The notes: generated by a model from the letters alone, not told the origin. A DNA stretch of 34,208 nucleotides from Macrostomum lignano (GCA_002269645.1 NIVC01004821.1:1-34208); one strand, 5' to 3'; positions 1,673 to 31,430 are shown, counted from the first letter of the stretch. Numbers and translations are program-made.

Positions 1673-1679
1673 GATAGAC

Positions 1680-1717
<38 letters not shown>

Positions 1718-1727
1718 ATAGATAGAC

Positions 1728-1777
<50 letters not shown>

Positions 1778-1799
1778 ATAGATAGACAGATAGATATAC

Positions 1800-1833
<34 letters not shown>

Positions 1834-1851
1834 ATAGATAAATAGATAGAC

Positions 1852-1897
<46 letters not shown>

Positions 1898-1907
1898 ATA
1901 GATAGAC

Positions 1908-1945
<38 letters not shown>

Positions 1946-2053
1946 ATAGATAAATAGATAGACAGATAGATAGATAGATAGATAAATAGATAGACAGATA
2001 GATAGACAGATAGATAAATAGATAGACAGATAGATAGATAAATAGATAGACAG

Positions 2054-2084
<31 letters not shown>

Positions 2085-2187
2085 GATAGACAGATTGATA
2101 GACAGATAGATAGACAGATAGATAGATAATAGATAGACAGATAGATAGATAATAGATACAGATAGATAGATAAATAGATATACAGAC

Positions 2188-2238
<51 letters not shown>

Positions 2239-2270
2239 CAGATAGATAGATAGACACATAGATAGATGGA
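1673..2270. repeat. (GATA)n/(GACA)n microsatellite, ~600 bp
   Basis: Direct reading; produces the spurious (IYLS)n ORFs on the minus strand. Confidence 0.98.
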
Positions 2271-2282
2271 TATGACACTCAC

Positions 2283-5749: not shown

Positions 5750-5859
5750 GACAGACATGTTTATAAAATCTATTTGATTGTCAACTTGGTTAACTAAAAG
5801 AAGTCACAATATTATAAACAAGGGAATTAAAAGCGTTATACTAATCACCACACTCTGCC

Positions 5860-6890
5860 CTAAAGGATCATGCACCTGAAGGATCAAAGACCTGAAGGAT
5901 CATGCACCTGAGTGAATAGACCTAAAGGATTATAGACCTGAAGGATCAGAGACCTGAAGAATAAGAGACCTAAAGGATCAGGGACCTGAAGGATCAGGGA
6001 CCTGAAGGATCAGGGACCTGAAGGATCAGGGACCTGAAGGATCAGGGACCTGAAGGATCAGGGACCTGAAGGATCAGGGACCTGAAGGATCAGGGACCTG
6101 AAGGATCAGGGACCTGAAGGATCAGGGACCTGAAGGATCAGGGACCTGAAGGATCAGGGACCTGAAGGATCAGGGACCTGAAGGATCAGGGACCTGAAGG
6201 ATCAGGGACCTGAAGGATCAGGGACCTGAAGGATCAGGGACCTGAAGGATCAGGGACCTGAAGGATCAGGGACCTGAAGGATCAGGGACCTGAAGGATCA
6301 GGGACCTGAAGGATCAGGGACCTGAAGGATCAGGGACCTGAAGGATCAGGGACCTGAAGGATCAGGGACCCGAAGGATCAGGGACCTGAAGGATCAGGGA
6401 CCTGAAGGATCAGGGACCTGAAGGATCAGGGACCTGAAGGATCAGGGACCTGAAGGATCAGGGACCTGAAGGATCAGGGACCTGAAGTATAAAGGAGCTG
6501 AAAGATCAGAAACCTGAAGGATCAGGGACCTGAAAGAATAAACGTGAAGTATTGGACCTGAAGGATCAGACCTGAAAGATCAGAGGCCTGTAGGATCAGG
6601 GACTGAGAGACCTAAAGGATTAGACCTAAAGGATCATGCACCTGAAAGATCAGAGGCCTGTAGGATCAGGGACTGAGAGACCTAAAGGATTAGACCTAAA
6701 GGATCATGCACCTGAAGGATCATGCACCTGAGTTATTAGACCTTAAGGATCAGAGACCTGAAGGATTAGACCTGAAGAGTCAGAGACCTGAACAATTAGA
6801 GACCTGAAGGATTAGACCTGAAGGATCATGCCCTTAAAGGATTAGACCTATAGGATCAAAGACCTTAATGATTAGAGACCTGATGACTCC
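5860..6890. repeat. 16-bp minisatellite (CCTGAAGGATCAGGGA)n, ~31 near-perfect copies at 5978-6487 with degenerate flanks
   Basis: Direct reading. Confidence 0.97.
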
Positions 6891-11000: not shown

Positions 11001-11435
11001 CTATGCCTAGACTAGTCTTGTAACAACTTCAAGGGTATTTAGTGACTTAGTCATGAGTCCTACTGTAGAAAATTTTTGTGTTAGCAAAAGGACATAAGAA
11101 TTTATCAAAAGACTAAAAGACAAGACAAATAGCTATTATAACTTTGGTATCAGCTTTAAGGTAGAATTAAAAGTCTCTTAGATGTATTAGAAATCTCTTA
11201 GAAAACTGAAGTCTAGGCAATACAAGTTTTTGCAAGCTCTTTATTCTGTTAATTATGTAAATTAGGATAGATATTTGTGCAAAATATCTACCCAATATAA
11301 TACTACATAAATTACAGCTTGGATCTTTGATTAGATCCAATGTTAAGCATAAAAAACATTAAATTTACCCAACTGGATTTTGATTGTGACAATGACTTTA
11401 ACTATATATATGCATACAAAAATATTTACCTTCAG

Positions 11436-12541
11436 TCTACCTCACTGCAACTGCCCTCAACAACAGATGAGGAGGCATCAGCCTCCGCCTATGCCAAATT
11501 TCTAATCATAGCCGATAATATCAAGCGTACCACGCGTACTGGCTGGCAGCTTCGAGGCCTGAACAATGTGGAAACTGTTGCCAGCCACATGTGGTCCATG
11601 GCTGCTGAAGCTGCAGTCCGCTTGCCAGCCTGGCCGGCTGCTCCGGAGCCAACCAGGACCGCCTAGTAGAGCTCTGCATTGTACACGATCTGGCCGAAGC
11701 TGTTGTAGGCGACCTGACGCCACACTGCGGTGTGCCGCCGGACGAGAAGCTCAGACGCGAACAGGCCGCACTGAATAGCATGGCCGCCAATTTGAGCCGG
11801 GAGTCATCGGCTAAGCTAATTAGCCTGTTCGCTGAGTACAATGCTCAGGCTACAGTAGAGGCCCGTCTAGCTAAAGAATTAGATAGATTAGACATGTGCT
11901 GCCAGGCGGCTTATTACCAATTGACCCGGCCAAACTGTCCGAATCTGTCCGAGTTCACCCGATCCTGTCTGTCAAAAACCAGCATTAGCGGTGTGTCCAG
12001 TCGAATTCGTTCGGCAAATGTTTTTGTTGAATCCGCCAAGTCTAGCGAGACTGACAGTGCTGAGATTCCATTCAAACAGTTGACTCTGTTCTCCAGGTAC
12101 AAAGAGATGAGATTAATGCCATTACAGCTGCCGTCCACAGCCAGTTGGCAACCGGAACCAGTTCCGCTAGGCTGTCATCAGTACATGGTGTGCCTGATAG
12201 CGCTGACCCTGCCTAAGCATTGTTTGCCGATGCTTGCAGACACCGGAGCAGCCGAACTTGTTCGCACTGTAGGCTCCGCTAACTTCTATGATGACGGCTC
12301 TGTAGCCTTCAGCAAACTGGATCTGCTCGATTCTGATAGCCTGGCCTGTCCGTTCGACTCCGCCAATTCGGTTGCTAAGGACGCTTCGGCTAGCGGACAG
12401 TTGCTTAGCGATTTAGTTTGGTTAGATGTAGCTTTGACTGCGCGCAGCGCTGGCGCATCAGCTGCTGCCGCGACTAGCGGACTGCCTAGTCGGATTAGTC
12501 TGTCTTACCTGCGGCAGGTGTGCGAACACGTGTTGCACTAG
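11436..12541 (+). CDS. HDDC2: HDDC2/YfbR-like HD-domain 5'-deoxynucleotidase with a frameshift at ~11610-11650 and a degenerate second HD-like repeat; true start unresolved
   Basis: First frame KFLIIADNIKRTTRTGWQLRGLNNVETVASHMWSMA; second frame QDRLVELCIVHDLAEAVVGDLTP..VPPDEKLRREQ..AEY..EARLAKELDRLDM. These match the HDDC2 motifs KRxxRTGW, ESVxxHM, HDxAExxVGD, EK..RE and EA..K.LD. Acceptor-like CCTTCAG at 11429-11435. Confidence 0.85.
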
Positions 12542-13204: not shown

Positions 13205-14707
13205 ATGCCTTTTACAGCAGCCGCCGCCAGACCAGCCGCTCGCATCGCAATTGTAGGCGCTGGCATTGCAGGCCTGTCAGCCGCCAGCACCCTGGCTCGG
13301 CTGGCAGCGGCCGCCAACCGTCAGCCGCTAGAGATCTGGCTGTTGGACAAGTCCGACCGGCCAGGCGGTTGGGTGCGCACCGCCACTGACTCGGCCGGCT
13401 GCGTGTACGAACTGGGACCCAGGACTATACGCGGGGCGTCTCCGTCTGGCAGCTACTTGCTGGACTTGGTGAGGCAGTCCGGCTTGAAGGACGAACTGGT
13501 GACCCTGACTACTAGCCATCCGGCAGCCGCTAGGCGTCTGGTTGCCATCGACAACCAGCTGACAACTGTCGGTCAGCTATTGGCTAAGAATTTGGTATCA
13601 TCTAAGCCGCCATTTCAGCGCTCTCTGATTGGCTGGACGGCCAGCCAATGGCTAGCTGGCCAATGGCCGCCTAAGCCTCTAGCCGAAGGCACGGACCAAT
13701 CATTAGACGAATTCGCCAGGTCCCGGCTAGGGCCCGACCTGACCGACTATCTGCTCGACCCGCTGACCCGCGGCGTGTTTGCCGGCCGACTCTCCGACCT
13801 GGGCGTCGCTGCCGCTTTCCCGCATCTGCCCGAAGCTGAACGACGCCGCGGCAGCCTCCTGCTGGGCTTGCTAGCTCCGAGCGCATCCAAATCGCCGCCG
13901 GACCCGTTGCTAGGCGACCGGTGCGCTGTCTGGTCGCTGAAACGCGGCCTCGGATCCCTGGCCGAGGCGTGCCTAGACAAGCTCCGTCAGGACGCCAACG
14001 TTCGCTGCCGTTTCGGCTCGGCCGTTGAAAGCCTTCGCCGATTGGCCGACGGTCGAATCGGACTCCGGCTGAGCACCACGAAGGACGTATCTGGCGAGGC
14101 CAGCTTCGATGGCGTCATCCTCTGCGTGCCTGCCTTCTCCGCCGCCAGACTGTGGCCGGAGCGGCTCGGCCGGCTGACTCCGGAGCTGTCCAGCCTGCCC
14201 TGGGTCAGTCTGGCCATTGTCAGCCTGCTGTACAATGGCAACCCGGTGCCGGAGCCCGCTTTCGGTCATCTGGTGCCTTCGGGTGCCTCCGGCGGGGAGC
14301 CCGCTGTGCTCGGTGTGGTGTACGATTCGTGCCTGTTCCCGGACAGGCAGCCGGCCGGATCGGCCAGGCTCACCTGCATGCTCGGCGGCGCCTGGTACCA
14401 TCGAATAGCCGGGCTGAGCTCGGACAGTCTCATCCGATTGGCTGTTAATCACGTGACCGCCTGTCTGGGCCCCTCGGCCTCCAGGCCTGTCGCGGCCGAC
14501 TGTCGCCTGCTAACGAACTGCATACCGCAGTACCCGGTGGGACACGTCGGACAGGTGGCCGATTGGCGAGACGGACTGGCCGGGGCTGGAGCGCCGATTC
14601 TACTGGCTGGCGCGTCCTACGACGGCGTCTCCGTGCCCGACTGCGCCAGGAGCGGCGCCCAGCAGGCCAAGGAGTGCCTGCGGCTGCTGCGCCTGCTGCC
14701 GCACTGA
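13205..14707 (+). CDS. PPOX: Protoporphyrinogen oxidase (HemY/PPOX family), 500 aa, intronless
   Basis: FAD-binding IAIVGAGIAGLSAA, then RPGGWVRT, YELGPRTIR, LLDPLTRGVFAG, FGHLVP, LGVVYDSCLFP, LTCMLGG, CIPQYPVGH and GASYDGVSVPDC. Confidence 0.97.
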   Translation: MPFTAAAARPAARIAIVGAGIAGLSAASTLARLAAAANRQPLEIWLLDKSDRPGGWVRTATDSAGCVYELGPRTIRGASPSGSYLLDLVRQSGLKDELVTLTTSHPAAARRLVAIDNQLTTVGQLLAKNLVSSKPPFQRSLIGWTASQWLAGQWPPKPLAEGTDQSLDEFARSRLGPDLTDYLLDPLTRGVFAGRLSDLGVAAAFPHLPEAERRRGSLLLGLLAPSASKSPPDPLLGDRCAVWSLKRGLGSLAEACLDKLRQDANVRCRFGSAVESLRRLADGRIGLRLSTTKDVSGEASFDGVILCVPAFSAARLWPERLGRLTPELSSLPWVSLAIVSLLYNGNPVPEPAFGHLVPSGASGGEPAVLGVVYDSCLFPDRQPAGSARLTCMLGGAWYHRIAGLSSDSLIRLAVNHVTACLGPSASRPVAADCRLLTNCIPQYPVGHVGQVADWRDGLAGAGAPILLAGASYDGVSVPDCARSGAQQAKECLRLLRLLPH

Positions 14708-14739: not shown

Positions 14740-15900
14740 TGAATGGGGATCAGGATCAGGATTGGGAAGGCCTGAAAGGAATCAGTACTCTCGTATTTTG
14801 GGGTTTAAGATTGGTACGAGCGTATTAGGATTTTAGGATCAGCCCATAGTCTTGGGGTGTGATCAGGATTGGGATGGGGAACAGGATTGGGATGGGGAAC
14901 AGGATTGGGATGGGGATTGCGAAGGGGATCAGGGTTTGGAGATGGGGATAAATATTGGAATGGGGATCAGAATTAGAATGTGAATCAGGATTAGGACAGG
15001 AATCAGGATTGAGATGGGATTCAAGATTGAGATGGGAATCAAAATTAAGATAGGGATCAGGATTGAGATGGGATTCAAGATTGAGATGGGAATCAAAATT
15101 AAGATAGGGATCAGGATTGAGATGGGATTCAATATTGAGATGGGAATCAAAACTAAGATAGGGATCAAGATTGAGATGGGAATCAAAATTAAGATAGGTA
15201 TCAGGATTGAGATGGGATTCAAGATTGAGATGGGAATCAAGATTAAGATAGGTATCAGGATTGAGATGGGAATCAAGATTAAGATAGGTATCAGGATTGA
15301 GATGGGAATCAAGATTAAGATAGGTATCAGGATTGAGATGGGAATCAAGATTAAGATAGGTATCAGGATTGAGATGGGAATCAAGATTAAGATAGGTATC
15401 AGGATTGAGATGGGAATCAAGATTAAGATAGGTATCAGGATTGAGATGGGATTCAAGATTGAGATGGGAATCAAGATTAAGATAGGTATCAGGATTGAGA
15501 TGGGAATCAAGATTAAGATAGGTATCAGGATTGAGATGGGAATCAAGATTAAGATAGGTATCAGGATTGAGATGGGAATCAAGATTAAGATAGGTATCAG
15601 GATTGAGATGGGATTCAAGATTGAGATGGGGATCAGGATTGAGATGGGAATCAAGATTAAGATAGGTATCAGGATTGAGATGGGGATCAGGATTGAGATG
15701 GGGATCAGGATTGAGATGGGGATCAGGATTGAGATGGGGATCAGGATTGAGATGGGGATCAGGATTGAGATGGGGATCAGTATTGGGATGGAGAGCATAA
15801 TGAAGTGGGGATCAGATTGAGGTGGGATTAGGATAAGGGTGGTGATTGGGATTAATATTGAGGTGATGATTGGGATTGGGATTGAGATGGGGATCTGGTG
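14740..15900. repeat. 18-bp minisatellite (GATCAGGATTGAGATGGG) with a 36-bp higher-order unit at ~15010-15670
   Basis: Direct reading; source of the (IPISIL)n and (GIKIEM)n ORFs. Confidence 0.96.
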
Positions 15901-16543
15901 ATTAAGATTTGGATTGAGATGCGTATGGAAAATAAGATTCTTAAGGGTTTTTAAAATAGGAAATTTTATCGTCACAATCTGCTACTTTGTTGTGTTTAGC
16001 GTATTCTATAGTATAGGCTATTAATTATTAACCCATTCTTTGGCATTTTCCTATTTAACTTGAATATTCTCTCATTGGCTCATCACTTCATTTGCGTTAA
16101 AACGATAACAAAAAAGTCATGCATTTTATGGTCATTATTGCCGCTTGCAGCTCAATGTGTGTGTCTAGAATTACTAATCACATAGAACTTCGTTTAGCCA
16201 TTTTGATGATAACTATAGTTCATTTTAGATTTGTGCCATTTTGTAACTCCTAACATTTACAGACTTGTGTATATCGCTGATTGTGTGCATAATTAATCTC
16301 TAACTAAACAAATATATACGGAATATTTACACCATTATTAGTTATGCTTGTAAATACATTTTAATTGTAATAGTGTTGTCAATCTCAGTATCAAAAACCT
16401 TTTCTATCTACTGTTGAAAATTAAGTAGTGTATTGCCGGATTCCTTCGTGTTTTTTTCTATAAAAAATAGACTATATAAAAGCTCATACTTGCTACTTTA
16501 AAAAAATAAGTAGTGCAAATCGTTTTCTCGATATTTTTTATTC

Positions 16544-16999
16544 ATGGAGACGAGACAAGCAATCCGCTGGCTACCAACGTTTCTGGCCTTTGTAGGCTTC
16601 TGGTATCTGCTCTGCCTCATTGTGGGCAGACGCGCCACCTATAGTTTTGCCACCGTCTCCAGTCACCATGGCAACTATTCAGTTGTTTACATTACAACAC
16701 CCTCATCTGACGAAGCCGAAAGTTTAGCTAGCGCTCTAGTGGCTAAAGAATTGGCCGCCTGCGTTAACGTGCTGCCCAGCGTCACCTCCGTGTACGGCTG
16801 GGAAGGCCAGGTGCGCAAGGATCCGGAATCGTTAATGATTGTAAAAACCCGGTTAGCTCTGGTGCCGGAACTGGCTGACTATGTTGCGTCAAATCATCCG
16901 TATAGTGTACCGGAAGTGCTGGCTGTTCCAGTGATTGGCGGCTTGTCAAAATACCTGGACTGGGTTCACAGGGCTACTGGCGGTCTGCGGCCCACTTGA
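16544..16999 (+). CDS. CUTA: CutA divalent-cation tolerance protein with N-terminal hydrophobic segment, 151 aa, intronless
   Basis: YSVVYITTP..EAESLA..LV..ELAACVNVLPSVTSVYGWEG...E.LMIVKT...HPYSVPEVLAVPV..G..YLDWV; real ATG at 16544. Confidence 0.96.
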   Translation: METRQAIRWLPTFLAFVGFWYLLCLIVGRRATYSFATVSSHHGNYSVVYITTPSSDEAESLASALVAKELAACVNVLPSVTSVYGWEGQVRKDPESLMIVKTRLALVPELADYVASNHPYSVPEVLAVPVIGGLSKYLDWVHRATGGLRPT

Positions 17000-18664: not shown

Positions 18665-19846
18665 CCTGAACCTTACTCCTTATCCTGTCAGCTCCTGATC
18701 CTTACACTGCAAATCCTGTCAGTCAGCTCCTGATCCTTTCACCGCAAATCCTGTCAGTCAGCTCCTGATCCTTTCACTGCAAATCCTGTCAGTCAGCTCC
18801 TAATCCTTTCACTGCAAATCCTGTCAGCTCCTGATCCTTTCACTGCAAATCCTGTCAGTCAGCTCCTGATCCTTACACTGCAAATCCTGTCAGTCAGCTC
18901 CTGATCCTTTCACTGCAAATCCTGTCAGTCAGCTCCTGATCCTTACACTGCAAATCCTGTCAGTCAGCTCCTGATCCTTTCACTGCAAATCCTGTCAGTC
19001 AGCTCCTGATCCTTACACTGCAAATCCTGACAGTCAGCTCCTGATCCTCACACTGCAAATCCTGTCAGCTCCTGATCCTTACACTGCAAATCCTGACAGT
19101 CAGCTCCTGATCCTCACACTGCAAATCCTGTCAGCTCCTGATCCTTACACTGCAAATCCTGTCAGTCAGCTCCTGATCCTCACACTGCAAATCCTGTCAG
19201 CTCCTGATCCTTACACTGCAAATCCTGACAGTCAGCTCCTGATCCTTACACTGCAAATCCTGACAGTCAGCTCCTGATCCTTACACTGCAAATCCTGACA
19301 GTCAGCTCCTGATCCTTACACTGCAAATCCTGTCAGTCAGCTCCTGATCCTTACACTACAAATCCTGACAGTCAGCTCCTGATCCTCACACTGCAAATCC
19401 TGACAGTCAGCTCCTGATCCTTACACTGCAAATCCTGACAGTCAGCTCCTGATCCTTACACTGCAAATCCTGTCAGCTCCTGATCCTTACACTGCAAATC
19501 CTGACAGTCAGCTCCTGATCCTTACACTGCAAATCCTGACAGTCAGCTCCTGATCCTTACACTGCAAATCCTGACAGTCAGCTCCTGATCCTTACACTGC
19601 AAATCCTGACAGTCAGCTCCTGATCCTTACACTGCAAATCCTGTCAGCTCCTGATCCTTACACTGCAAATCCTGACAGTCAGCTCCTGATCCTTACACTG
19701 CAAATCCTGACAGTCAGCTCCTGATCCTTACACTGCAAATCCTGTCAGCTCCTGATCCTTACACTGCAAATCCTGTCAGCTCCTGATCCTTACACTGCAA
19801 ATCCTGTCAGCTCCTGATCCTTACACTGCAAATCCTGTCAGCTCCT
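18665..19846. repeat. 35/31-bp minisatellite (CAGTCAGCTCCTGATCCTTACACTGCAAATCCTGT), ~35 copies
   Basis: Direct reading; units alternate with and without one CAGT. A short 21-22-bp repeat follows to ~19935. Confidence 0.97.
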
Positions 19847-19967
19847 TTCATCACAGAGCCTGTAAGCTATCATCGCAGAGTCTGTAAGCTTTCATCGCAG
19901 AGTCTGTAAGCTTTCATCGCAGAGCCTATTAGCTATCACCTTTCATCCCGAACCCTTCACCACACAG

Positions 19968-20447
19968 GCCTCATCCGGTAACCGCCGCAGCCGACTCTGC
20001 CAAGTCAACAACAACAACAACAGCATCGCCAGCACCAACACCCAGAGCTACTCTTATTCAGCTCTCCAAGTGGTGGATGATCTCAATCACAGCCGCAGTT
20101 CTGAGACCGGCTCGGGCGGCGCTGTCCCGGCCAGCGGCCCGCTGCTCAGCCTGATGTTCACCTTCGACATCAACTTGGAGCACGCCGTTTTTGTATTGCA
20201 CGCCTGTCACGGTGTTCTAGCCGAGGCGCTGTTCGTGCTGGCGTCTGGCGGCGCCCTTCGCTCCACGGGCCTGCCGGTCTGGACTCCTCAAGACGATGCC
20301 GACGTTTTGAGCTGCGACATTGAAAGAATGCGCCGGGTGCGAGATCGGTTCGGACGGGTTGACGTCTGTCTGCGCCTTATTTACCTCGGCGACTGCGGCT
20401 GGCCTGAGCCCGACCGCGACCCGCCTGAGCTGGCACTCTGCTGCTGA
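19968..20447 (+). CDS. TERF2IP: Terminal coding exon with a Rap1/TERF2IP C-terminal (RCT) domain
   Basis: Acceptor CACACAG|GCC at 19967/19968, open frame to TGA at 20447. LMFTFDINL..GVL..LASGGALRSTGLPVWTPQDDADV..D..RFG..V..R aligns with human RAP1 RCT as recalled (LMEKFNLDL..GEL..LASGQRADGYPIWSRQDDIDL..D..KFG..V.RR). Orthology versus a domain-only homolog is unresolved. Confidence 0.8.
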   Translation, partial: ASSGNRRSRLCQVNNNNNSIASTNTQSYSYSALQVVDDLNHSRSSETGSGGAVPASGPLLSLMFTFDINLEHAVFVLHACHGVLAEALFVLASGGALRSTGLPVWTPQDDADVLSCDIERMRRVRDRFGRVDVCLRLIYLGDCGWPEPDRDPPELALCC

Positions 20448-20790: not shown

Positions 20791-21335
20791 TTTGGAGCGA
20801 CGCTGATAGACTGACGCGGTTGGAGTGACAGGGACCAACGGAGTGACATTATGAAAGGTTATGCAGGAGTGACAAAGACCAAATGTGAGGACATTTAATT
20901 TGGTAAATGCTTTATTACTTCAAAAGCGCATTTTTAAACTCGGGTTTTTGTACTAGTGTACTAGTATTCTGCATTTTGTTTAGTTTATTAATAAATAGAT
21001 ATTTGAGTCACAGTTTGGAAATTTAATTTTCAATTTTCAATTTTGTTAACAAGAAAAAGTAGCCATGTTTTTTTTCAAATTTGAGTCCGTTTCTCATTAA
21101 CACGGTAGAAATCATTGAATAGTAATAAATAGTTTTATAGGTCAATTAACTGCATAGAAGACTGTATTTAATGTGTCAATTATTAGCTTATTATTATTAA
21201 TAATATTTTATTTTTATTCATCATTTAATGTTGAAAGAAAAATTAAAACTGGGTGATGCAATAAAAAGTGACTTTACAGTGCTACTGCTCAGCTATGTCT
21301 CAAGAATATTTGTTAGAAACTGTTAAGGGGCTTGT

Positions 21336-21814
21336 CCTGTTGCTGGCGCCCCTGGTGCTAAAGCCCCTGGTGCTGGCGCCCCTGGTGCTGGCGCCCCTAG
21401 TGCTGGCGCCCCTGTTGCTGGCGCCCCTGTTGCTGGCGCCCCTGTTGCTGGCGCCCCTGTTGCTGGCGCCCCTGGTGCTAAAGGCCCTGGTGCTGGCGCC
21501 CCTGGTGCTAAAGCCCCTGTTGCTGGCGCCCCTGTTGCTGGCGCCCCTGTTGCTGGCGCCCCTGGTGCTAAAGGCCCTGGTGCTGGCGCCCCTGGTGCTA
21601 AAGCCCCTGTTGCTGGCGCCCCTGGTGCTGGCGCCCCTGGTGCTGGCGCCCCTGGTGCTGGCGCCCCTGGTGCTGGCGCCCCTGGTGCTGGCGCCCCTAG
21701 TGCTGGCGCCCCTGGTGCTAAAGCCCCTGTTGCTAAAGCCCCTGGTGCTAAAGCCCCTGGTGCTAAAGCCCCTGGTGCTAAAGCCCCTGGTGCTGGCGCC
21801 CCTGGTGCTGGCGC
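21336..21814. repeat. 15-bp GC-rich minisatellite (GCTGGCGCCCCTGGT), ~32 copies
   Basis: Direct reading; gives the (LAPLV)n and (PGAPA)n ORFs. Confidence 0.97.
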
Positions 21815-22284: not shown

Positions 22285-22772
22285 CCAACACTGTACATAT
22301 CCCAAACTAACTGTACATATCCCCAACCAACTGTACATATCCCCGACCAACTGTGCATAACCCCAACCCACTGTACATATCCCCAACCAACTGTACATGT
22401 CCCCAACCAACTGTACATATCCCCAACCAACTGTACATATCCCCGACCAACTGTGCATAACCCCAACCCACTGTACATATCCTCAACCAACTGTACATGT
22501 CCCCAACCAACTGTACATATCCCCAACCAACTGTACATATCCTCAACCAACTGTACATGTCCCCAACCAACTGTACATATCCCCAACCAACTGTACATAT
22601 CCTCAACCAACTGTACATGTCCCCAACCAACTGTACATATCCCCAACCAACTGTACATATCCTCAACCAATTGTACATATCCCCAACCAACTGTACATAT
22701 CCTCAACCAACTGTACATGTCCCCAACCAACTGTACATATCCTCAACCAACTGTACATATCCCCAACCAACT
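22285..22772. repeat. 20-bp minisatellite (CCCCAACCAACTGTACATAT) in ENaC intron 2
   Basis: Direct reading, ~24 copies. Confidence 0.97.
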
Positions 22773-22792
22773 TCCCGGCCTGGTCAGCTCAC

Positions 22793-23693
22793 CAATCACT
22801 CCGCCAGCCTCAGACAGGAAGCTCTCAATGGGATATTGCCAGTCCTCCTCGAACAGGGTAACCCTAGAGGACAGGAAGTAGATGTTGGCTTGAACCACGT
22901 GGTCGCTGGCCGATATACCGCTGAGCATCTTGCCGCCTGCTGAGCTGACGTTGATCAGCGCTGGAATGAAGGACCGGTCGGGCGCCCTCTGCCAGGTCTG
23001 CAGCAGCAGTCGCTCAACGTCGCCGGTCCACTGACTGCCAGCAGTGCCGCCGCTGCCCGCAGAGGTTGTTGGCAGAGCCGTTGTGGCGGCGTGGGCCACA
23101 ATGCCCTCCTCTTTGCAGGCCTTCTGACAGGCGGACACCAGCCGTCCGTAGACTGTCAGATCGTCGTTAAATCGTAGCTGATTGTCGACGCAAGCTTTGT
23201 CCAGCATCATCCGGTCGAAGGAGTTGATCCGCGGCGGCGCCCCGGCCAGTCGGGTGAAATTCAACCGGCTGCAGCGTCTGTCCCGCTGCAGCGGCAGCGG
23301 AATCGGCAGGTTGTCCGTGACGCAGCCGCAGGCGGTTTTGATCGCCGAGTTCAACGCCATGTCGACGCAGTTCACCGTGTCGTAGTCGTAGTTCTCGGAG
23401 GAGCCGTCAAAGTTGACAGCCTGATGGTGCTTGGTGCACGGGTCGTTGATGGTGGTCATCCGTTTGGTGCGCTCGACCATCAGGCCGATGTCCGTGCGGT
23501 GGCCAGCGGGCGCCGGCACTGGCGCCGCCCGAAAGAAGTTGGTGAACTTGTCGTAAGGGGTCAGCAGGAAGGCGTAGCCCCGAGTGTACCGTGTCGAGGT
23601 GCTGAAGTAGCTGTCCTTCAGGCCTTCGTAGGCCAGCGTGAGGGTCAGGCCGTTGTCGTAGCCGCCGTAGGCCTGCGGGCGGGTTCGCAAGGC
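22793..23693 (-). CDS. DEG/ENaC exon 2 (extracellular Cys-rich thumb to start of TM2)
   Basis: Acceptor TTCATAG|GCC; GYDNGLTLTL, CVDMALNSAIKTACGC, CQKACKE, NIYF, YPIESFLSEAGGVIG; phase-1 donor G|GTGAGC; length 901 = 3n+1. Confidence 0.93.
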
Positions 23694-24190: not shown

Positions 24191-24643
24191 ACAAAAACTT
24201 CGTATGAAATGGCTCAGTCGAGACGCAAAGGAACTCTCAATATTCATAAATAATAATTATTACTATAAACTTATGCACTTAAAACAAACTTTGGTCCGGG
24301 CTCTGGACCAGCTGAAACCAACTGAACAAAAAAATTTGCTCAAATAGCTCCCTGCTCAACGATCAATATGGTACGATATAGCTAGCCTAGATCCTGAGCT
24401 ACACCTGTGTTTGCAGCAGGGGTTTTGAATACACAAACGGGCTGCAGTTGACTTTCGTCATGACTCTGCATTATCCCTATGGATTAATGAGAATTTCTGA
24501 CGATGAGCGCTTTTTCAATGTGTGGGAGATTTTCTGAGACAGGAAATCTTTTCTCGTTTAAATTTGACTATCGGTGTATTCGGAATGCTGATGCTATGGA
24601 ATGGCTATGGTAGGGAAAATGAGCTGTGGTGATGCTGAAAATG

Positions 24644-25310
24644 AGTCAGGGTTAGATGCATGAGTACTGAAAATGAGTCAGGGTAGATGATAACTGAAAA
24701 TGAGTCAGGGTAGATGATAACTGAAAATGAGTCAGCTAGGGTAGATGATAACTGAAAATGAGTCAGCTAGGGTAGATGATAACTGAAAATGAGTCAGGGT
24801 AGATGATAACTGAAAATGAGTCAGAGTAGATGATAACTGAAAATGAGTCAGGGTAGATGATAACTGAAAATGAGTCAGGGTAGATGATAACTGAAAATGA
24901 GTCAGGGTAGATGATAACTGAAAATGAGTCAGGGTAGATGATAACTGAAAATGAGTCAGGGTAGATGATAACTGAAAATGAGTCAGGGTAGATGATAACT
25001 GAAAATGAGTCAGGGTAGATGATAACTGAAAATGAGTCAGGGTAGATGATAACTGAAAATGAGTCAGAGTAGATGATAACTGAAAATGAGTCAGGGTAGA
25101 TGATAACTGAAAATGAGTCAGGGTAGATGATAACTGAAAATGAGTCAGGGTAGATGATAACTGAAAATGAGTCAGGGTAGATGATAACTGAAAATGAGTC
25201 AGGGTAGATGATAACTGAAAATGAGTCAGGGTAGATGATAACTGAAAATGAGTCAGAGTAGATGATACTAAAAATAAGTCACACCGATGATACTGAGAAT
25301 GAGTCATGGT
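24644..25310. repeat. 27-bp minisatellite (TCAGGGTAGATGATAACTGAAAATGAG) in ENaC intron 1
   Basis: Direct reading, ~24 copies; gives the (THFQLSSTL)n ORF. Confidence 0.97.
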
Positions 25311-25417
25311 AATGACAAATGAACCACTTTACGCCAAAAAGTGAGTCACAGTGACACCAAACATCAGTCAATCTACCAGCAGCCCCCTCTGACACCCTTG
25401 AGAACTGCTCAGCTCAC

Positions 25418-26028
25418 CCAGGCGCTGGATCCAGTCGGCTCGAACACAAAGCAGATGCCGTACCGATCCGAGGCCACCGCAGTGAAATTCGCCGCGCTGC
25501 ACGAGCGCCAGTTGAAGCTGCAGGTGAGCATCACCGAGTCCAGAGCGGTGGTCACATTGGCCAGCTCTGGCAGACGGCCCTCCAGGTAGGCGTCCAGCAG
25601 AGCCTTGTCCGCCACCGCCTCTCGACGATCTTCTTCGGCTACGCCAAAATACGGCGAGGTCAAGTTGAACAGCTGATTGTGCAGGTCGCGCACTACCCAG
25701 TTACCCGGCTGGGTCATCAGGTAGCTGGAAAAGTAGCTGGTGGGACAGATGGCCACTTTGGGAAAGTGCAGCGGCTCCAGCACGTTGTTGGTGATCACCC
25801 GCTTCTGGTAGGCGAAGTACTTGACTGAGATCAGGGCCAGGTGGTAGGACAGGCCGCAGATAGCTCCAGTGAGCAGCAGGGACCACAAAATGGTTTTGAT
25901 TCTGGACTCAGACTAGGCCACATTCTTGTATCCGTGACCGCTGGTTGACGTGGCGAACTGCAGCACCGAAGTTTGGCCCGTTTCACCTTCAACTCTGCGC
26001 TGGAGCTGTCCGGCCCGGCTTGCGACAT
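25418..26028 (-). CDS. DEG/ENaC exon 1 (N-terminus, HG motif, TM1, FPKVAIC)
   Basis: FATSTSGHG pre-TM1 motif, TM1 ILWSLLLTGAICGLSYHLALI, LHFPKVAICP, MLTCSFNWRSC, YGICFVF; phase-0 donor TGG|GTGAGC. Confidence 0.88.
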
Positions 26029-26222: not shown

Positions 26223-27540
26223 GGGGCTACAGCTACAAAACGGGCGCCAACTACAGAGGGGGCGCCAGCTACAGAGGGGGCGCCAGCTACAGAGGGGGCG
26301 CCAGCTACAGAGGGGGCGCCAGCTACAGAGGGGCACCAGCTACAGAGGGGCGCCAGCTACAGAGGGGCACCAGCTACAGAGGGGGCGCCAGCTACAGAGG
26401 AGACGCCAGCTACAGAGGGGGCGCCAGCTATTGAGAGGGTGCCAGCAACACAGGGGCGCCAGCTACTGAGAGGGCGCCAGCTACTGAGAGGACGCCAGCT
26501 ACAGAGGAGATGCCAGCTTCAGAGCGGGCGCCAGCTACAGAGAAGACGCCAGCTACAGAGGGGGCGCCAGCTACAGAGGGGGCGCCAGCTACAGAGGAGA
26601 CGCCAGCTACAGAGGGGGCGCCAGCTACAGAGGGGCGCCAGCTACAGAGGGGGCGCCAGCTACAGAGGGAGCGCCAGCTACAGAGGGAGCGCCAGCTACA
26701 GAGGGGCGCCATCTACAGAGGGGGCGCCAGCTACAGAGGGGGCCAGCTACAGAGGAGACGCCAGCTACAGAGGGGGCGCCAGCTACAGAGGGGGCGCCAG
26801 CTACAAAGGGGCGTCAGCTACTGAGAGGGCGCCAGCTACAGAGGGGGCGCCAGCTACAGAGGGGGCGCCAGCTACAGAGGGGGCGCCAGCTACAAAGGGG
26901 CGTCAGCTACAGAGGGGGCGCCAGCTACAGAGGGGGCGCCAGCTACAGAGGGGGCGCCAGCTACAGAGGGGCGTCAGCTACAGAGGGGGCGCCAGCTACA
27001 GAGGAGACGCCAGCTACAGAGGGGGCGCCAGCTACAGAGGGGGCGCCAGCTACAGAGGGGCGCCAGCTACAGAGGGGGCGCCAGCTACAGAGGGGCGTCA
27101 GCTACAGAGGAGACGCCAGCTACAGAGGGGGCGCCAGCTACAGAGGGGCGCCAGCTACAGAGGGGCGCCAGCTACAGAGGGGGCGCCAGCTACAAAGGGG
27201 CGTCAGCTACAGAGGGGGCGCCAGCTACAAAGGGGCGTCAGCTACAGAGGGGGCGCCAGCTACAGAGGGGCGCCAGCAACAGAGGGGCGCCAGCTAATGA
27301 GATGGCGCCAGCTACTGAGAGGGTCCCAGCTACAGAGGGGGCGCCAACTACAGAGGGGGCTCCAGCTACTGAGAGGGTGCCAGCAATAAAGGGGCGCCAG
27401 CTACTGAGAGGGTGCCAGCAACACAGGGCGCCAGCTACTGAGAGGGTCCCAGCTACAGAGGAGACGCCAGCTACTGAGAGGGCACCAGCTGCAGATGGGG
27501 GCGCTAACTACCAAGGGGGGTACTGAGGTGCAAGCTACAG
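26223..27540. repeat. 17/18-bp GC-rich minisatellite (GGGGGCGCCAGCTACAGA), ~70 copies
   Basis: Direct reading. Confidence 0.97.
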
Positions 27541-28289: not shown

Positions 28290-29810
28290 TGTGACTCCAG
28301 CTAGCTTATTTCACAGTCTGTGTGAACCCAGGTAGCTTATTTCACAGTCTGTGTGACTCCAGGTAGCTTATTTCACAGTCTGTGTGACTCCAGGTAGCTT
28401 ATTTCACAGTCTGTGTGACTCCAGGTAGCTTATTTCACAAGTCTCTGTGAATCCAGGTAAGCTTACTTATTACAGACTGAGTGGATACAGGTAAGCCTAG
28501 ACAGACTGTGTGAACTCAGGTAAGCCTAGACAGACTGTGTGAACTCAGGTAAGCCTAGACAGACTGTGTGAACTCAGGTAAGCCTAGACAGACTGTGTGA
28601 ACTCAGGTAAGCCTAGACAGACTGTGTGAACTCAGGTAAGCCTAGACAGACTGTGTGAACTCAGGTAAGCCTAGACAGACTGTGTGAACTCAGGTAAGCC
28701 TAGACAGACTGTGTGAACTCAGGTAAGCCTAGACAGACTGTGTGAACTCAGGTAAGCCTAGACAGACTGTGTGAACTCAGGTAAGCCTAGACAGACTGTG
28801 TGAACTCAGGTAAGCCTAGACAGACTGTGTGAACTCAGGTAAGCCTAGACAGACTGTGTGAACTCAGGTAAGCCTAGACAGACTGTGTGAACTCAGGTAA
28901 GCCTAGACAGACTGTGTGAACTCAGGTAAGCCTAGACAGACTGTGTGAACTCAGGTAAGCCTAGACAGACTGTGTAAACTCAGGTAAGCCTAGACAGACT
29001 GTGTGAACTCAGGTAAGCCTAGACAGACTGTGTGAACTCAGGTAAGCCTAGACAGACTGTGTGAACTCAGGTAAGCCTAGACAGACTGTGTGAACTCAGG
29101 TAAGCTAGACAGACTGTGTGAACTCAGGTAAGCCTAGACAGACTGTGTGAACTCAGGTAAGCCTAGACAGACTGTGTGAACTCAGGTAAGCCTAGACAGA
29201 CTGTGTGAACTCAGGTAAGCCTAGACAGACTGTGTAAACTCAGGTAAGCCTAGACAGACTGTGTGAACTCAGGTAAGCCTAGACAGACTGTGTGAACTCA
29301 GGTAAGCCTAGACAGACTGTGTGAACTCAGGTAAGCCTAGACAGACTGTGTGAACTCAGGTAAGCCTAGACAGACTGTGTGAACTCAGGTAAGCCTAGAC
29401 AGACTGTGTGAACTCAGGTAAGCCTAGACAGACTGTGTGAACTCAGGTAAGCCTAGACAGACTGTGTAAACTCAGGTAAGCCTAGACAGACTGTGTGAAC
29501 TCAGGTAAGCCTAGACAGACTGTGTGAACTCAGGTAAGCCTAGACAGACTGTGTGAACTCAGGTAAGCCTAGACAGACTGTGTGAACTCAGGTAAGCCTA
29601 GACAGACTGTGTGAACTCAGGTAAGCCTAGACAGACTGTGTGAACTCAGGTAAGCTAGACAGACTGTGTGAACTCAGGTAAGCCTAGACAGACTGTGTGA
29701 ACTCAGGTAAGCCTAGACAGACTGTGTGAACTCAGGTAAGCCTAGACAGACTGTGTGAACTCAGGTAAGCCTAGACAGACTGTGTGAACTCAGGTAAGCT
29801 ATATTCTGCA
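28290..29810. repeat. 29-bp minisatellite (GTAAGCCTAGACAGACTGTGTGAACTCAG), ~45 copies, preceded by ~5 related 31-bp units
   Basis: Direct reading. Confidence 0.98.
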
Positions 29811-30467
29811 CATTAAAAACTTGTTTGTAGCCTCCATCAGCTTGTGATAAAAAGAGCTCTATAAAATATCGAACACAGACTCTTGAAAGCATACAAACGC
29901 ACCGGCTGTAATGTTTATGTTAGAAACATTGACTAACTGGAAGTGCTTGATGGCTAAGTAATGTTTAATCAAACACACACGGCCGGCAGAGGAGCCGTGG
30001 CGCCAGGGCCACTCAGTGTTTAGCAACCGCTTTTCTATTAATTAGTTTTCCCATTTCAGATGCTGAAAAAGTTCGCGTCAGTCAGTCTATAGAAAAAACA
30101 CAGTGCCATATTATTGGGAATTGGCAAACAGTTGATGGCGGCATCAGCTAAAAAGCAAGCAAAATAGGCTGGCATATAACTCCTCTAGCTAGTATAAGCC
30201 ACTCATAATTGATTGAAGAGGCCTTGCCAAACAATAATTTCTGCTTTATTACTCAATATTTTCCACCTCTCCATACGAAATGCCAATTCTATTGCTGTTA
30301 GTAGACTTTCAAGTGGTTTTGAGTGTAATTAAACTGTCAAATTCATACAGACTGAGTATTATTATTTCTAAACAGACTCAGTACTAAGCTCTATTCCCGA
30401 ATATTGATGTTTAGAATTTGTGTGACAGGGAATTAGTGCTAAACATTTGCACCAAAACTGATTGGTG

Positions 30468-30947
30468 AATTCTGAGATGCCAAGTGGGGAAATCTGAGAT
30501 GCCAAGTGGGGAATTCTGAAATGCCAAGTGGAGAATTCTGAGATGCCAAGTGGGGAATTCTGCGATGCCAAGTGGGAATTCTGAGATACCAAGTGGGGAA
30601 TTCTGAGATGCCAAGTGGGGAATTCTGAGATGCCAAGTGGGGAATTCTGAGATGCCAAGTGGGGAATTCTGAGATACCAAGTGGGGAATTCTGAGATGCC
30701 AAGTGGGGAATTCTGAGATGCCAAGTGGGGAATTCTGAGATGCCAAGTGGGGAATTCTGAGATACCAAGTGGGGAATTCTGAGATGCCAAGTGGGAATTC
30801 TGAGATGCCAAGTGGGGAATTCTGAGATGCCAAGTGGGGAATTCTGAGATACCAAGTGGGGAATTCTGAGATGCCAAGTGGGGAATTCTGAGATGCCAAG
30901 TGGGAATTCTGAGATGCCAAGTGGGGAATTCTGAGATGCCAAGTGGG
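30468..30947. repeat. 22-bp minisatellite (GCCAAGTGGGGAATTCTGAGAT), ~21 copies
   Basis: Direct reading; some 21-bp copies lack one G. Confidence 0.97.
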
Positions 30948-31430
30948 GCCTTCCGTTCGATCCGGGCCGTCGTCCAGTCCGAAGAGCGCCAGAGGCTCGG
31001 CTGTGGCAGGCGGTGGTCGAAACCGTCCTAATCTACAACGCCGAGACGTGGACGCTGACGGCTACGCTGGAGCGGCAGCTGGACTCGGCGCACTCAGGGC
31101 TGCTCCGTGCGGCCTTTCGAGCTGACGAGAGTGTCGGGACCGAGGCCTGCACGATCTGCAGCAGCGCCCGTCCATCATCCTGCGCCGGCGGCGACTTCAA
31201 CTGGCGGGCCACGTGATCCGGGCCGAGGGCTACTGCCCCAACCTGTTCAGGACGTCCTGCTGCTCACCCTGCAGGGCCCGCTCAGGCGGGGTCAGGCCCA
31301 AACCCATCGATACGTGGACTGCCTCCTACGCGACGCCGGGGCGCCTGACACCGCAAAGGCGCGGACTTCGTTCGCTCTCAGGTTCTGCGACGCGCCCTGC
31401 TCTGTGAATTTGCTTGCGGGGCTGCGTAAT
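30945..31430 (+). mobile_element. 5'-truncated RTE-like LINE 3' fragment, frameshifted
   Basis: RLWQAVVETVLIYNAETWTLTATLERQLDSAHSGLLRAAF and VLLLTLQGPLRRGQ..RYVDCLLRDAG resemble the post-RT region of RTE-clade ORFs (VLLYGxETWTL...RLLR; RRRGRP..TY.D.L..D). Confidence 0.8.

What the first reader, a model, noticed from the sequence alone, without database searches (positions are those of the whole stretch)
19968..20447. Rap1/TERF2IP C-terminal (RCT) domain exon: a candidate shelterin component in an invertebrate, apparently without BRCT and Myb exons
The unannotated 125-aa ORF aligns over ~80 residues with human RAP1 RCT, including LASG, G.P.W..QDD and FG..V..R. In mammals this domain binds TRF2; in budding yeast it binds Sir3/Rif. 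Rap1 is lacking in Drosophila and not recognised in C. elegans, and to my knowledge it has not been characterised in flatworms. I found no BRCT- or Myb-like exon between CutA and this exon, so this may be an RCT-only protein rather than canonical Rap1. The protein ends in -LCC.
Basis: partly seen in the sequence, partly recalled or inferred. Interest (0 to 1): 0.85.

Follow-up and report, generated by a model that had tools for sequence, protein, structure and literature searches.

The report
Stand-alone Rap1 RCT protein in flatworm
A small gene of the flatworm Macrostomum lignano encodes only the partner-binding tail (RCT domain) of the telomere protein Rap1, without its usual BRCT and Myb domains. 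Its start codon most likely comes from the trans-spliced leader RNA, and it is a first testable lead to flatworm telomere-capping proteins.

Summary
Window 19968..20447(+) is an open frame of 159 codons ending -LCC, and its C-terminal about 90 residues are a Rap1/TERF2IP RCT domain. Sequence scores are modest: Pfam Rap1_C E 1.3e-4 (22.4 bits, cut-off 24.2) and human RAP1 RCT E 4.4e-4. Other tests agree: no shuffle in 20,000 reaches the real score, hhalign gives 94.7%, and both predicted six-helix models find only Rap1 RCT structures as best matches.

The window is M. lignano scaffold NIVC01004821.1. The exon is not unannotated: GenBank holds it as a 5'-partial "hypothetical protein" CDS starting exactly at 19968.

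- It is the fourth gene (g4) of a same-strand unit, HD-domain gene, PPOX, CutA, RCT.
- No BRCT or Myb domain lies between CutA and the exon.
- No in-frame ATG precedes helix 1. The M. lignano spliced leader ends in ATG, and the acceptor is in phase 0.
- Two paralogous CutA copies likewise have an acceptor where an ATG should be.

Best reading: an RCT-only protein of 160 aa, made from a trans-spliced mRNA that starts at the leader's AUG.

Its only detectable relative is a 110-aa RCT-only ORF from an unidentified organism. A telomeric role is inferred, not shown.

The parts
19961..19967 (+). 3' splice acceptor (cacacag|), proposed site of spliced-leader trans-splicing, phase 0 with the ORF
   Evidence: Sequence. 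It is conserved in all three paralogous copies. The deposited CDS of the window's own record starts at the next base, 19968. Only the CAG of the published trans-splice motif [T/C]TNCAG is matched.
19968..20447 (+). Single coding exon of the RCT-only gene: 159 codons plus the TGA stop. The proposed product is 160 aa, with Met supplied by the SL AUG.
   Evidence: Translation. The exact product is held as an NCBI protein on this scaffold. The exon is intact in the paralogues L001 and L004.
19968..20132 (+). N-terminal low-complexity region (residues 1-55, including an Asn run), predicted disordered
   Evidence: pLDDT is below 50 for residues 1-58. All six substitutions and the in-frame 3-nt indel among the three copies fall within codons 1-49.
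20133..20393 (+). RCT domain, a six-helix bundle (residues 56-142)
   Evidence: - Pfam Rap1_C matches residues 68-140.
- Human RAP1 RCT, E 4.4e-4.
- AlphaFold2 helices at 6-16, 20-29, 34-42, 57-64, 68-78 and 80-92 of the 109-aa construct.
- The seven best Foldseek matches are all Rap1 RCT structures.
- hhalign 94.7%.
- No nucleotide difference among the three copies.
20394..20444 (+). C-terminal tail DCGWPEPDRDPPELALCC, ending in two cysteines
   Evidence: Sequence. pLDDT is about 36. The tail is absent from the relative P0004. Lipid modification is speculation only.
20077..20154 (+). Out-of-frame upstream ORF: ATG at 20077, 25 codons, and a TGA that overlaps the ATG of Met63 (cTGATGt at 20152-20156)
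   Evidence: Read from the sequence. It matters only if the leader's AUG is not used.
18687..19938 (+). Tandem arrays just upstream of the acceptor (35-mer x34 and 22-mer x4), taken as outron or intergenic DNA
   Evidence: Tandem Repeats Finder. The array length differs among the three copies.
16544..16999 (+). CutA1 gene, the upstream neighbour in the same transcriptional-unit cluster (g3)
   Evidence: Pfam CutA1, E 5.8e-35. The names g1-g4 in the paralogous scaffold.
20990..20995 (+). First AATAAA after the stop, a candidate poly(A) signal (others at 21124 and 21260)
   Evidence: Pattern scan. Inferred, not verified.

Best explanation
The exon at 19968..20447 is the whole coding sequence of a small gene of Macrostomum lignano. 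The product consists of a disordered N-terminal stretch of about 55 residues, one Rap1-type RCT domain, and a short tail ending -LCC.

**Expression (inferred).** The gene is the last of four same-strand genes: an HD-domain gene, PPOX, CutA and RCT. These four carry one transcriptional-unit name. The 35-nt spliced leader, which ends in AUG, is trans-spliced onto the CAG|G acceptor at 19967|19968. That AUG then sits in frame (...GCAUG|GCC) and serves as the start codon. This explains why the genomic ORF has no ATG and why the deposited CDS is '5'-partial'.

**Function (inferred from the family).** In human, fission-yeast and budding-yeast Rap1, the RCT is a protein-binding module. Its helices 1-2 grip a short motif of a telomeric partner: TRF2, Taz1, or Sir3/Rif1/Rif2. 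The flatworm protein most likely docks in the same way on a partner, probably a telomere-bound one. It lacks the BRCT and Myb effector domains of canonical Rap1. It would therefore act as a minimal adaptor, or as a cap or competitor on that partner's Rap1-binding motif.
For: **RCT identity.**
- Pfam Rap1_C, E 1.3e-4.
- Human RAP1 RCT 3k6g, E 4.4e-4.
- 0 of 20,000 shuffles reach the real score against a vertebrate-only RCT profile.
- The only non-self relative among 1.84 billion representatives is P0004 (E 3.6e-4 for the whole library). P0004 itself passes the Pfam cut-off for Rap1_C (30 bits).
- Profile-profile comparison: 94.7%, E 6e-8.
- The AlphaFold2 model (pLDDT 76) is a six-helix bundle. 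Its seven best PDB matches are all Rap1 RCTs; 3k6g gives TM 0.66/0.77 and rmsd 2.1 A.
- A model made without any vertebrate sequence gives the same helices and the same seven best matches, at low confidence.

**RCT-only architecture.**
- The deposited CDS is one interval, 19968..20447.
- CutA ends at 16999 on the same strand, and the forward frames in between hold no Pfam domain.
- In the paralogous scaffold the four genes are named Mlig010534 g1-g4. The genome paper states that closely related (>=95% identical) transcriptional units share a name prefix and that units were cut into genes using trans-splicing and poly(A) evidence (PMC5730564).
- P0004 is likewise a short ORF, 110 aa from its ATG, behind a strong acceptor.

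**Start at the leader's AUG.**
- The SL sequence ends in ATG (PMC8629364).
- The acceptor is in phase 0.
- There is no in-frame ATG between the upstream stop near 19863 and Met63. Met63 lies inside helix 1, one of the two partner-binding helices (PMC8653790).
- In two of the three copies the neighbouring CutA gene has tttttattacag|GAG where the window has ATG|GAG, so it too needs the leader's AUG.
- Use of the leader's AUG as initiator is documented in flatworms (Cheng et al. 2006, as cited in PMC9851317).

**Constraint.** The 330-nt RCT part is identical in three copies. The flanks differ by about 1-4%, and all exon differences lie in the N-terminal 49 codons.
Against: - Sequence scores are modest. 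The Pfam hit is below the gathering score.
- A two-sequence profile (window plus P0004) finds 3k6g only at E 0.18, behind three spurious glycine-loop hits.
- The better structure model used an alignment dominated by vertebrate RCTs, so it is partly circular.
- No transcript or SL-read data could be examined.
- The acceptor matches only the CAG of the published trans-splice motif.
- The annotated 5' ends of PPOX, CutA and the L001 copy of this gene lie 20-27 nt inside their ORFs. The coincidence of the CDS start with the acceptor at 19968 is therefore suggestive, not proof.
- After subtracting repeats, the CutA-to-RCT distance is about 1.7 kb. That exceeds the 1-kb operon criterion of PMC8629364.
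- Identity among the three copies may reflect recent duplication rather than selection.
- No partner, localisation or phenotype is known.
- A separate BRCT-Myb gene elsewhere in the genome could not be searched for.
Confidence: 0.6

Rival explanations
1. The exon is the last exon of a canonical multi-exon Rap1 (BRCT-Myb-RCT). Its upstream exons were missed by the transcript-based annotation, or lie further upstream or off the scaffold.
For: The CDS is flagged 5'-partial and has no ATG. The acceptor in phase 0 would equally suit cis-splicing. BRCT and Myb are reported as the most conserved parts of Rap1 across metazoans (PMC8653790).
Against: - Three other genes on the same strand sit directly upstream in all three copies.
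- The non-repeat DNA between CutA and the exon has no Pfam domain in any forward frame.
- The gene is named separately as g4.
- The distant relative P0004 has its own ATG just before the domain.
Confidence: 0.1
2. The mRNA is made, but translation starts inside the exon. It would start either at Met63 (ATG 20154), after the 25-codon out-of-frame uORF whose TGA overlaps that ATG, or at the GTG at 20070. The product would be a 97- or 125-aa protein.
For: ATG 20154 is the first in-frame ATG. The uORF 20077..20154 ends in TGATG, an arrangement that could permit re-initiation. The N-terminal 49 codons carry all differences between the copies, four of six non-synonymous.
Against: Met63 aligns with the Met of human 'RQLMEKF' in the middle of helix 1. 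A start there would truncate one of the two partner-binding helices (PMC8653790). GTG initiation is rare in animals. The leader's AUG has a good context (GCAUGG) and lies upstream of both.
Confidence: 0.1
3. The ORF is a transcribed relic of a lost Rap1 gene and has no function. It looks intact only because the three copies duplicated recently.
For: The copies differ by only about 1-4% even in non-coding DNA, so their identity is weak evidence of selection. No ATG is present. There are no homologues in other annotated flatworm proteomes.
Against: A relative with only about 37% identity (P0004) keeps an intact ORF of the same architecture and passes the Pfam cut-off. That implies long-term conservation of a stand-alone RCT. 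The RCT has 0 differences in 330 nt against 6 in the adjacent 150 nt. The gene model derives from RNA evidence.
Confidence: 0.1
4. The resemblance to RCT is chance or convergent. The domain would be an unrelated small helical module, for example a UBA-like one.
For: The Pfam score is below the gathering score. The two-sequence profile is weak against the PDB. UBA domains appear among low-ranking fold matches.
Against: Four partly independent tests agree:
- a shuffle control, 0 of 20,000;
- hhalign, 94.7%;
- the bridge through P0004, which is above the Pfam cut-off;
- fold searches in which ranks 1-7 are all Rap1 RCT and UBA hits have E>3.
Confidence: 0.07

Closest known systems
Human RAP1/TERF2IP, RCT domain (PDB 3K6G, complex with the TRF2 Rap1-binding motif)
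   Same: About 28% identity over about 85 residues. It shares the six-helix bundle (predicted, TM 0.66/0.77) and the signature residues: G in the helix 2-3 turn, L-ASG, P-[IV]-W-x-x-QDD and FG. The domain lies at the C-terminus in both.
   Different: Human RAP1 is 399 aa, with BRCT and Myb domains before the RCT. The flatworm product is 160 aa, with only a disordered N-terminal stretch. It has an extra 17-residue tail ending -LCC. No partner is known.
Fungal Rap1 RCT (S. cerevisiae 3OWT, 4BJT, 4BJ5, 3CZ6; S. pombe Rap1-Taz1)
   Same: The same fold family: ranks 3-7 of the fold search. Partner binding through helices 1-2 is the family's shared mechanism (PMC8653790).
   Different: The yeast RCT is larger (about 150 aa) and only 18-20% identical. 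The yeast proteins bind DNA themselves through Myb domains.
P0004, a 110-aa ORF on Logan contig SRR24765318_366924 (organism unidentified)
   Same: It is the only detectable non-self relative: 37% identity overall and 43% in the PVW..DDA..FGR..RL.YL half. It is also a short single-exon ORF behind a strong phase-0 acceptor, preceded by a low-complexity stretch.
   Different: It has its own ATG directly before the domain and a Gly-rich loop insertion. It has no -LCC tail. It passes the Pfam Rap1_C cut-off.
Flatworm mRNAs that use the spliced leader's 3'-terminal AUG as initiator (Schistosoma mansoni; Cheng et al. 2006, cited in PMC9851317)
   Same: The leader ends in AUG, the acceptor is in frame with the ORF, and there is no genomic start codon.
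   Different: The case here is inferred from the genome sequence and annotation only. No SL-containing read was seen.

Membership tests
Rap1_C / RCT domain (Pfam PF11626) | Profile match at or above the curated gathering score (24.2 bits) | tested here: inconclusive
   22.4 bits, E 1.3e-4, covering profile positions 7-83 of 84, so just below the cut-off. The nearest relative, P0004, scores 30 bits. In a shuffle control, 0 of 20,000 shuffles reach the real score. hhalign gives 94.7%.
Rap1_C / RCT domain (Pfam PF11626) | Six-helix bundle superimposable on solved RCT structures | tested here: met
   The AlphaFold2 model has pLDDT 76 and six helices. Foldseek ranks 1-7 are all Rap1 RCT; 3k6g gives TM 0.66/0.77 and rmsd 2.1 A. 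The same ranking comes from a low-confidence model made without vertebrate sequences. This is a prediction, not a solved structure.
Rap1_C / RCT domain (Pfam PF11626) | Conserved signature columns and C-terminal position in the protein | tested here: met
   G32, L41, W55 and D60 are invariant across 25 sequences. P53, Q58 and D59 are nearly invariant. The stop codon lies 17 residues after the last helix.
Canonical Rap1/TERF2IP (shelterin subunit, BRCT-Myb-RCT) | N-terminal BRCT domain (PF16589) | tested here: not met
   There is no Pfam hit in the forward frames between CutA and the exon. The CDS is a single interval. A separate BRCT gene elsewhere in the genome was not searchable.
Canonical Rap1/TERF2IP (shelterin subunit, BRCT-Myb-RCT) | Central Rap1-type Myb domain (PF08914) | tested here: not met
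   The same scans apply. The 55 residues before the RCT are low-complexity and predicted disordered.
Canonical Rap1/TERF2IP (shelterin subunit, BRCT-Myb-RCT) | Binds a TRF2/Taz1-type telomeric DNA-binding protein and localises to telomeres | not testable with these tools
   It needs the M. lignano proteome, interaction assays and imaging. Myler et al. report that the vertebrate Rap1-binding motif of TRF2 is not found in invertebrates (PMC8653790).
SL trans-spliced mRNA initiating at the leader's 3' AUG | AG acceptor at the 5' boundary of the mature mRNA | tested here: met
   cacacag| lies directly before the first base of the deposited CDS and is conserved in three copies. Only the CAG of the [T/C]TNCAG motif is matched.
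SL trans-spliced mRNA initiating at the leader's 3' AUG | Leader AUG in frame with the ORF, with no genomic in-frame AUG that could give a complete domain | tested here: met
   The SL ends ...TTGCATG. The exon starts in phase 0. The first in-frame ATG is Met63, inside helix 1.
SL trans-spliced mRNA initiating at the leader's 3' AUG | SL-containing cDNA or reads across the junction | not testable with these tools
   No read-level data are available here. The gene was not mentioned in the papers or held supplements searched.

The most novel reading that the evidence does not exclude
In macrostomid flatworms, and perhaps more widely, Rap1 may have been reduced to, or supplemented by, a free-standing RCT module. 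This module would be made from an SL-AUG-initiated mRNA. It would dock on the flatworm's telomeric double-strand-binding protein and take part in end protection or length control in the long-lived stem-cell lineage. That would be a minimal 'Rap1' working without BRCT and Myb, the domains thought to be the most conserved. The same architecture in the distant relative P0004 would make this a small unrecognised protein family rather than a one-off.
Probability: 0.3. Interest if true: 0.75.

Novelty: new variant of a known kind. Interest (0 to 1): 0.55.

Why it matters
**State of the field.** Flatworms have TTAGGG telomeres and very long-lived stem cells, yet their capping proteins are almost unknown. 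In planarians only a POT1-like protein could be found by BLAST (PMC5032016). The survey of metazoan shelterin did not cover flatworms (PMC8653790).

**What this gene offers.**
- It is a concrete handle in the one flatworm with working transgenesis and RNAi. The tagged RCT could be used as bait to find the telomere-binding partner.
- A Rap1 relative that keeps only the RCT reverses the usual conservation pattern, in which BRCT and Myb are the best conserved and the RCT the least. It therefore bears on which Rap1 functions are ancestral.
- The locus is a clear example of start codons supplied by the spliced leader. That mechanism makes such genes look '5'-partial' in annotations and hides them from homology pipelines.

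Tried and rejected
- **Word-indexed protein search with the 159-aa ORF:** found only the gene's own cluster.
- **Full HMMER scan of 1.84 billion representatives:** one real relative (P0004) and two spurious repeat proteins, P0002 and P0003.
- **Profile of window plus P0004 against the PDB:** worse than the single sequence (3k6g at E 0.18). P0004's Gly-rich loop attracts designed repeat proteins.
- **Profile including the human RCT:** returned only vertebrate TERF2IP last-exon fragments. No invertebrate or second M. lignano RCT appeared.
- **Organism of SRR24765318:** could not be identified. No paper mentions the run. It is not from the M. cliftonense/M. hystrix project, which used ENA accessions. 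The neighbouring ORFs on L002 have no Pfam hit.
- **Literature and supplements:** 'Mlig010534', flatworm TERF2IP and Macrostomum telomere proteins all gave nothing relevant. The one 'Rap1' hit was the Ras-family GTPase.
- **Genomic copy of the spliced leader in the window:** none.
- **Upstream mini-exon ATGGGCAAC|gtacct at about 18543, which would give MGN-ASSGN...:** considered and not pursued. Nothing distinguishes it from chance, and the deposited CDS starts at the acceptor.
- **Acceptor ccgcag| at 19990|19991:** rejected, because the leader's AUG would then be out of frame.
- **Rab-type prenylation of the -LCC end:** unsupported. The tail is not conserved in P0004.

Full report
**What is at the coordinates.**
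- Window 19968..20447(+) is an open frame of 159 codons followed by TGA, and the product ends -LCC.
- The frame stays open upstream to a stop near 19863, with no ATG on the way.
- The first in-frame ATG is Met63, at 20154.
- Directly before 19968 lies ...ccttcaccacacag|, an AG acceptor.

**Source and annotation.**
- The window is the whole scaffold NIVC01004821.1 of the Macrostomum lignano assembly Mlig_3_7, GCA_002269645.1.
- The exact 159-aa product is already an NCBI protein on this record, with CDS 19968..20447.
- A 99%-identical paralogous copy is PAA64053.1, 'hypothetical protein BOX15_Mlig010534g4, partial'.
- The exon is therefore annotated, but as an uncharacterised, 5'-incomplete protein with no precomputed Pfam domain.

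**Is it an RCT domain? Sequence evidence.**
- Pfam gives one hit, Rap1_C (PF11626), at residues 68-140. It covers profile positions 7-83 of 84, with E 1.3e-4 and 22.4 bits. That is just below the 24.2-bit gathering score.
- phmmer against all PDB sequences finds only human TERF2IP: 3k6g_A at E 4.4e-4 and 8rd4_D at E 6.3e-3.
- A profile built only from vertebrate RCT fragments scores the real domain at 16.0 bits. The best of 20,000 shuffles of the domain reaches 6.1 bits.
- A full HMMER scan of 1.84 billion representative proteins finds one genuine non-self relative, P0004 (110 aa, E 3.6e-4 for the whole library). The other two hits are repeat proteins.
- P0004 passes the Pfam cut-off for Rap1_C on its own (30 bits). 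It shares PVW-P-DDA...FGR...RL-YL with the window protein.
- A profile of the window protein plus P0004, compared with a vertebrate RCT profile, gives 94.7% probability and E 6e-8.

**Is it an RCT domain? Structural evidence.**
- AlphaFold2 with a 25-sequence alignment gives a six-helix bundle (mean pLDDT 76).
- Its seven best PDB matches are all Rap1 RCT structures. Human 3k6g gives E 6e-4, TM 0.66/0.77 and rmsd 2.1 A. Yeast 4bjt, 4bj5, 3owt and 3cz6 follow.
- That alignment is mostly vertebrate RAP1, so I repeated the prediction with only the flatworm-type sequences.
- Confidence fell to pLDDT 48. The six helices stayed in the same places, and the same seven RCT entries again came first (E 0.014 to 0.15).

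**A weaker result.** A two-sequence HMM (window plus P0004) against the PDB places 3k6g only fourth, at E 0.18. It falls behind hits drawn by P0004's glycine-rich loop.

**Verdict on the domain.** Overall I take the RCT assignment as well supported, at about 0.85-0.9.

**Is anything attached to it?**
- On the same strand upstream lie three genes:
  - an HD-domain gene (HD_3), 11340..12541;
  - PPOX, 13205..14707;
  - CutA1, 16544..16999.
- The 3 kb between CutA and the exon consists of about 1.7 kb of unique DNA and about 1.25 kb of 35-mer and 22-mer tandem arrays.
- The three forward frames of the unique part give no Pfam hit at E<=1.
- In the paralogous scaffold NIVC01001788.1 (L001), the four genes are named BOX15_Mlig010534 g1, g2, g3 and g4, in order.
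- The genome paper explains the naming. Closely related transcriptional units (>=95% identical) share a prefix, and units were cut into mature mRNAs by the TBONE pipeline using trans-splicing and poly(A) evidence (PMC5730564).
- The RCT gene is thus treated as a separate mRNA, the last gene of a four-gene unit, with a single-interval CDS.
- A third copy of the locus, NIVC01001117.1 (L004), has the same intact exon. It is unannotated there.

**Where does translation start?**
- Met63 aligns with the Met of human 'RQLMEKF' and lies inside predicted helix 1.
- Helices 1 and 2 are the partner-binding surface of RCT domains (PMC8653790). A complete domain therefore needs a start upstream of Met63, and the genome offers none in frame.
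- The M. lignano spliced leader is CGGTCTCTTACTGCGAAGACTCAATTTATTGCATG, which ends in ATG (PMC8629364).
- About 30-39% of M. lignano genes are trans-spliced.
- Flatworm leaders are known to donate their 3'-terminal AUG as the initiator (Cheng et al. 2006, as cited in PMC9851317).
- The acceptor at 19967|19968 is in phase 0. SL trans-splicing there would give ...GCAUG|GCC UCA UCC, which encodes M-ASSGN... and a 160-aa protein.

**A parallel case next door.**
- In L001 and L004 the CutA ORF begins tttttattacag|GAGACGAGA. That is a consensus [T/C]TNCAG acceptor with no genomic ATG.
- The window copy reads ttcATG|GAGACGAGA at the same place.
- In two copies, therefore, CutA can only begin with the leader's AUG.
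- PPOX has tttgcag| 13 nt before its ATG.

**Caveats on the start-codon model.**
- I saw no reads.
- The RCT acceptor matches only the CAG of the published motif.
- The deposited 5' ends of PPOX, CutA and the L001 RCT copy lie 20-27 nt inside their ORFs. The exact match of the window's CDS start with the acceptor is therefore suggestive rather than conclusive.
- If the leader's AUG were not used, the first AUG would be out of frame at 20077. It opens a 25-codon uORF whose TGA overlaps the Met63 ATG. That would give a truncated domain, which I rate as unlikely.

**Conservation.**
- Among the three copies, the 330 nt that encode the RCT and the tail are identical.
- All six substitutions (four non-synonymous) between the window and L001 lie in the first 49 codons. 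So does the single in-frame 3-nt indel in L004.
- The neighbouring unique intergenic DNA differs by about 1.2% in mismatches, plus indels. About four differences would therefore be expected in the RCT part. This is mild evidence of constraint, and it is confounded by how recent the duplication is.

**The relative P0004.**
- P0004 gives stronger evidence of long-term constraint. It is about 37% identical, keeps an intact ORF, and sits on a 2.3-kb genomic contig from SRA run SRR24765318 (L002).
- Its ORF lies behind gtttttttcag| in phase 0. A 26-codon Ser/Thr/Pro/Ala-rich stretch follows, then its own ATG, then the RCT.
- The next ORF on that contig starts about 130 nt after the stop, behind ctctttcag. 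This looks like an operon of a trans-splicing organism.
- I could not identify the species.

**Mechanism, and what is shown versus inferred.**
- *Shown:* the ORF and its acceptor; similarity to RCT beyond chance; the predicted fold; the absence of BRCT and Myb in the gene and its upstream interval; the gene order and naming; the lack of a usable genomic ATG.
- *Inferred for expression:* SL trans-splicing at 19967|19968, with the leader's AUG as the start.
- *Inferred for function:* the RCT grips a short motif of a partner, as human RAP1 does with TRF2, S. pombe Rap1 with Taz1, and S. cerevisiae Rap1 with Sir3/Rif1/Rif2. The partner is probably the flatworm's telomeric double-strand-binding protein.
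- Without BRCT and Myb, the protein would be a minimal adaptor, or a cap or competitor on that partner.
- Myler et al. note that the vertebrate Rap1-binding motif of TRF2 is not recognisable in invertebrates. The partner interface is therefore open.

**Comparison with what is known.**
- The protein works like, and is homologous to, the RCT of Rap1/TERF2IP.
- It fails two defining features of canonical Rap1 (BRCT and Myb). I therefore file it as an RCT-domain protein, not as a Rap1 orthologue.
- I found no report of a telomeric Rap1 relative in flatworms. The planarian study found only a POT1-like protein (PMC5032016), and the metazoan shelterin survey does not mention flatworms.
- Whether M. 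lignano also has a separate BRCT-Myb gene could not be tested with the tools at hand.

**Verdict.**
- Novelty: a new variant of a known kind.
- Interest is moderate to fairly high for telomere and flatworm biologists. All functional claims still rest on homology.

Noticed in passing
window 16540-16550; L001 7398-7407; L004 9970-9979: The CutA start differs between paralogous copies. The window has a genomic ATG (ttcATGgag). L001 and L004 have a consensus trans-splice acceptor at the same place (ttacag|gag) and no ATG, so those copies must take their start codon from the spliced leader.
   Followed up: partly
window 13211, 16574; L001 10001, 7432; L004 10001: The deposited 5'-partial CDS starts of PPOX, CutA and the L001 RCT copy lie 20-27 nt downstream of the likely acceptor or ATG, and are not behind an AG. 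This looks like a systematic offset in the annotation's 5' boundaries. Its cause is unexplained.
   Followed up: no
window 22743-23690 (-) and 25409-25888 (-): Two large exons of an amiloride-sensitive sodium channel (ASC, DEG/ENaC family; Pfam E 6e-15 and 7e-14). They are separated by tandem arrays and are absent from the deposited gene list for 9968-30447.
   Followed up: partly
window 4465-5277 (-): A 270-aa ORF with a Claudin_2/PMP-22 four-helix membrane domain (E 4e-20).
   Followed up: no
window 31699-33844 (-): Fragments of a non-LTR retrotransposon: RVT_1 in two overlapping ORFs in different frames, plus RNase H. This implies frameshifts.
   Followed up: no
window 1669-2272, 5859-6828, 14862-15791, 18687-19841, 21336-21814, 22290-22772, 24635-25323, 26230-27519, 28472-29799, 30463-30948: The scaffold is packed with long minisatellite arrays (units of 4-36 nt, up to about 1.3 kb each) between and inside genes. 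Many give long spurious ORFs. Array lengths differ between the paralogous copies.
   Followed up: no
L002 1112-1790: On the contig that carries P0004, a second ORF (MPYGKPVSRRRRHHW..., 180 aa, no Pfam hit) begins about 130 nt after the RCT stop, behind ctctttcag. It ends at a likely splice donor (CAG|gtaact). The layout is operon-like, and the organism is unknown.
   Followed up: partly
window 20077-20156: An out-of-frame 25-codon uORF within the RCT exon ends in TGA, which overlaps the first in-frame ATG (TGATG). This may be chance or a back-up re-initiation arrangement.
   Followed up: no
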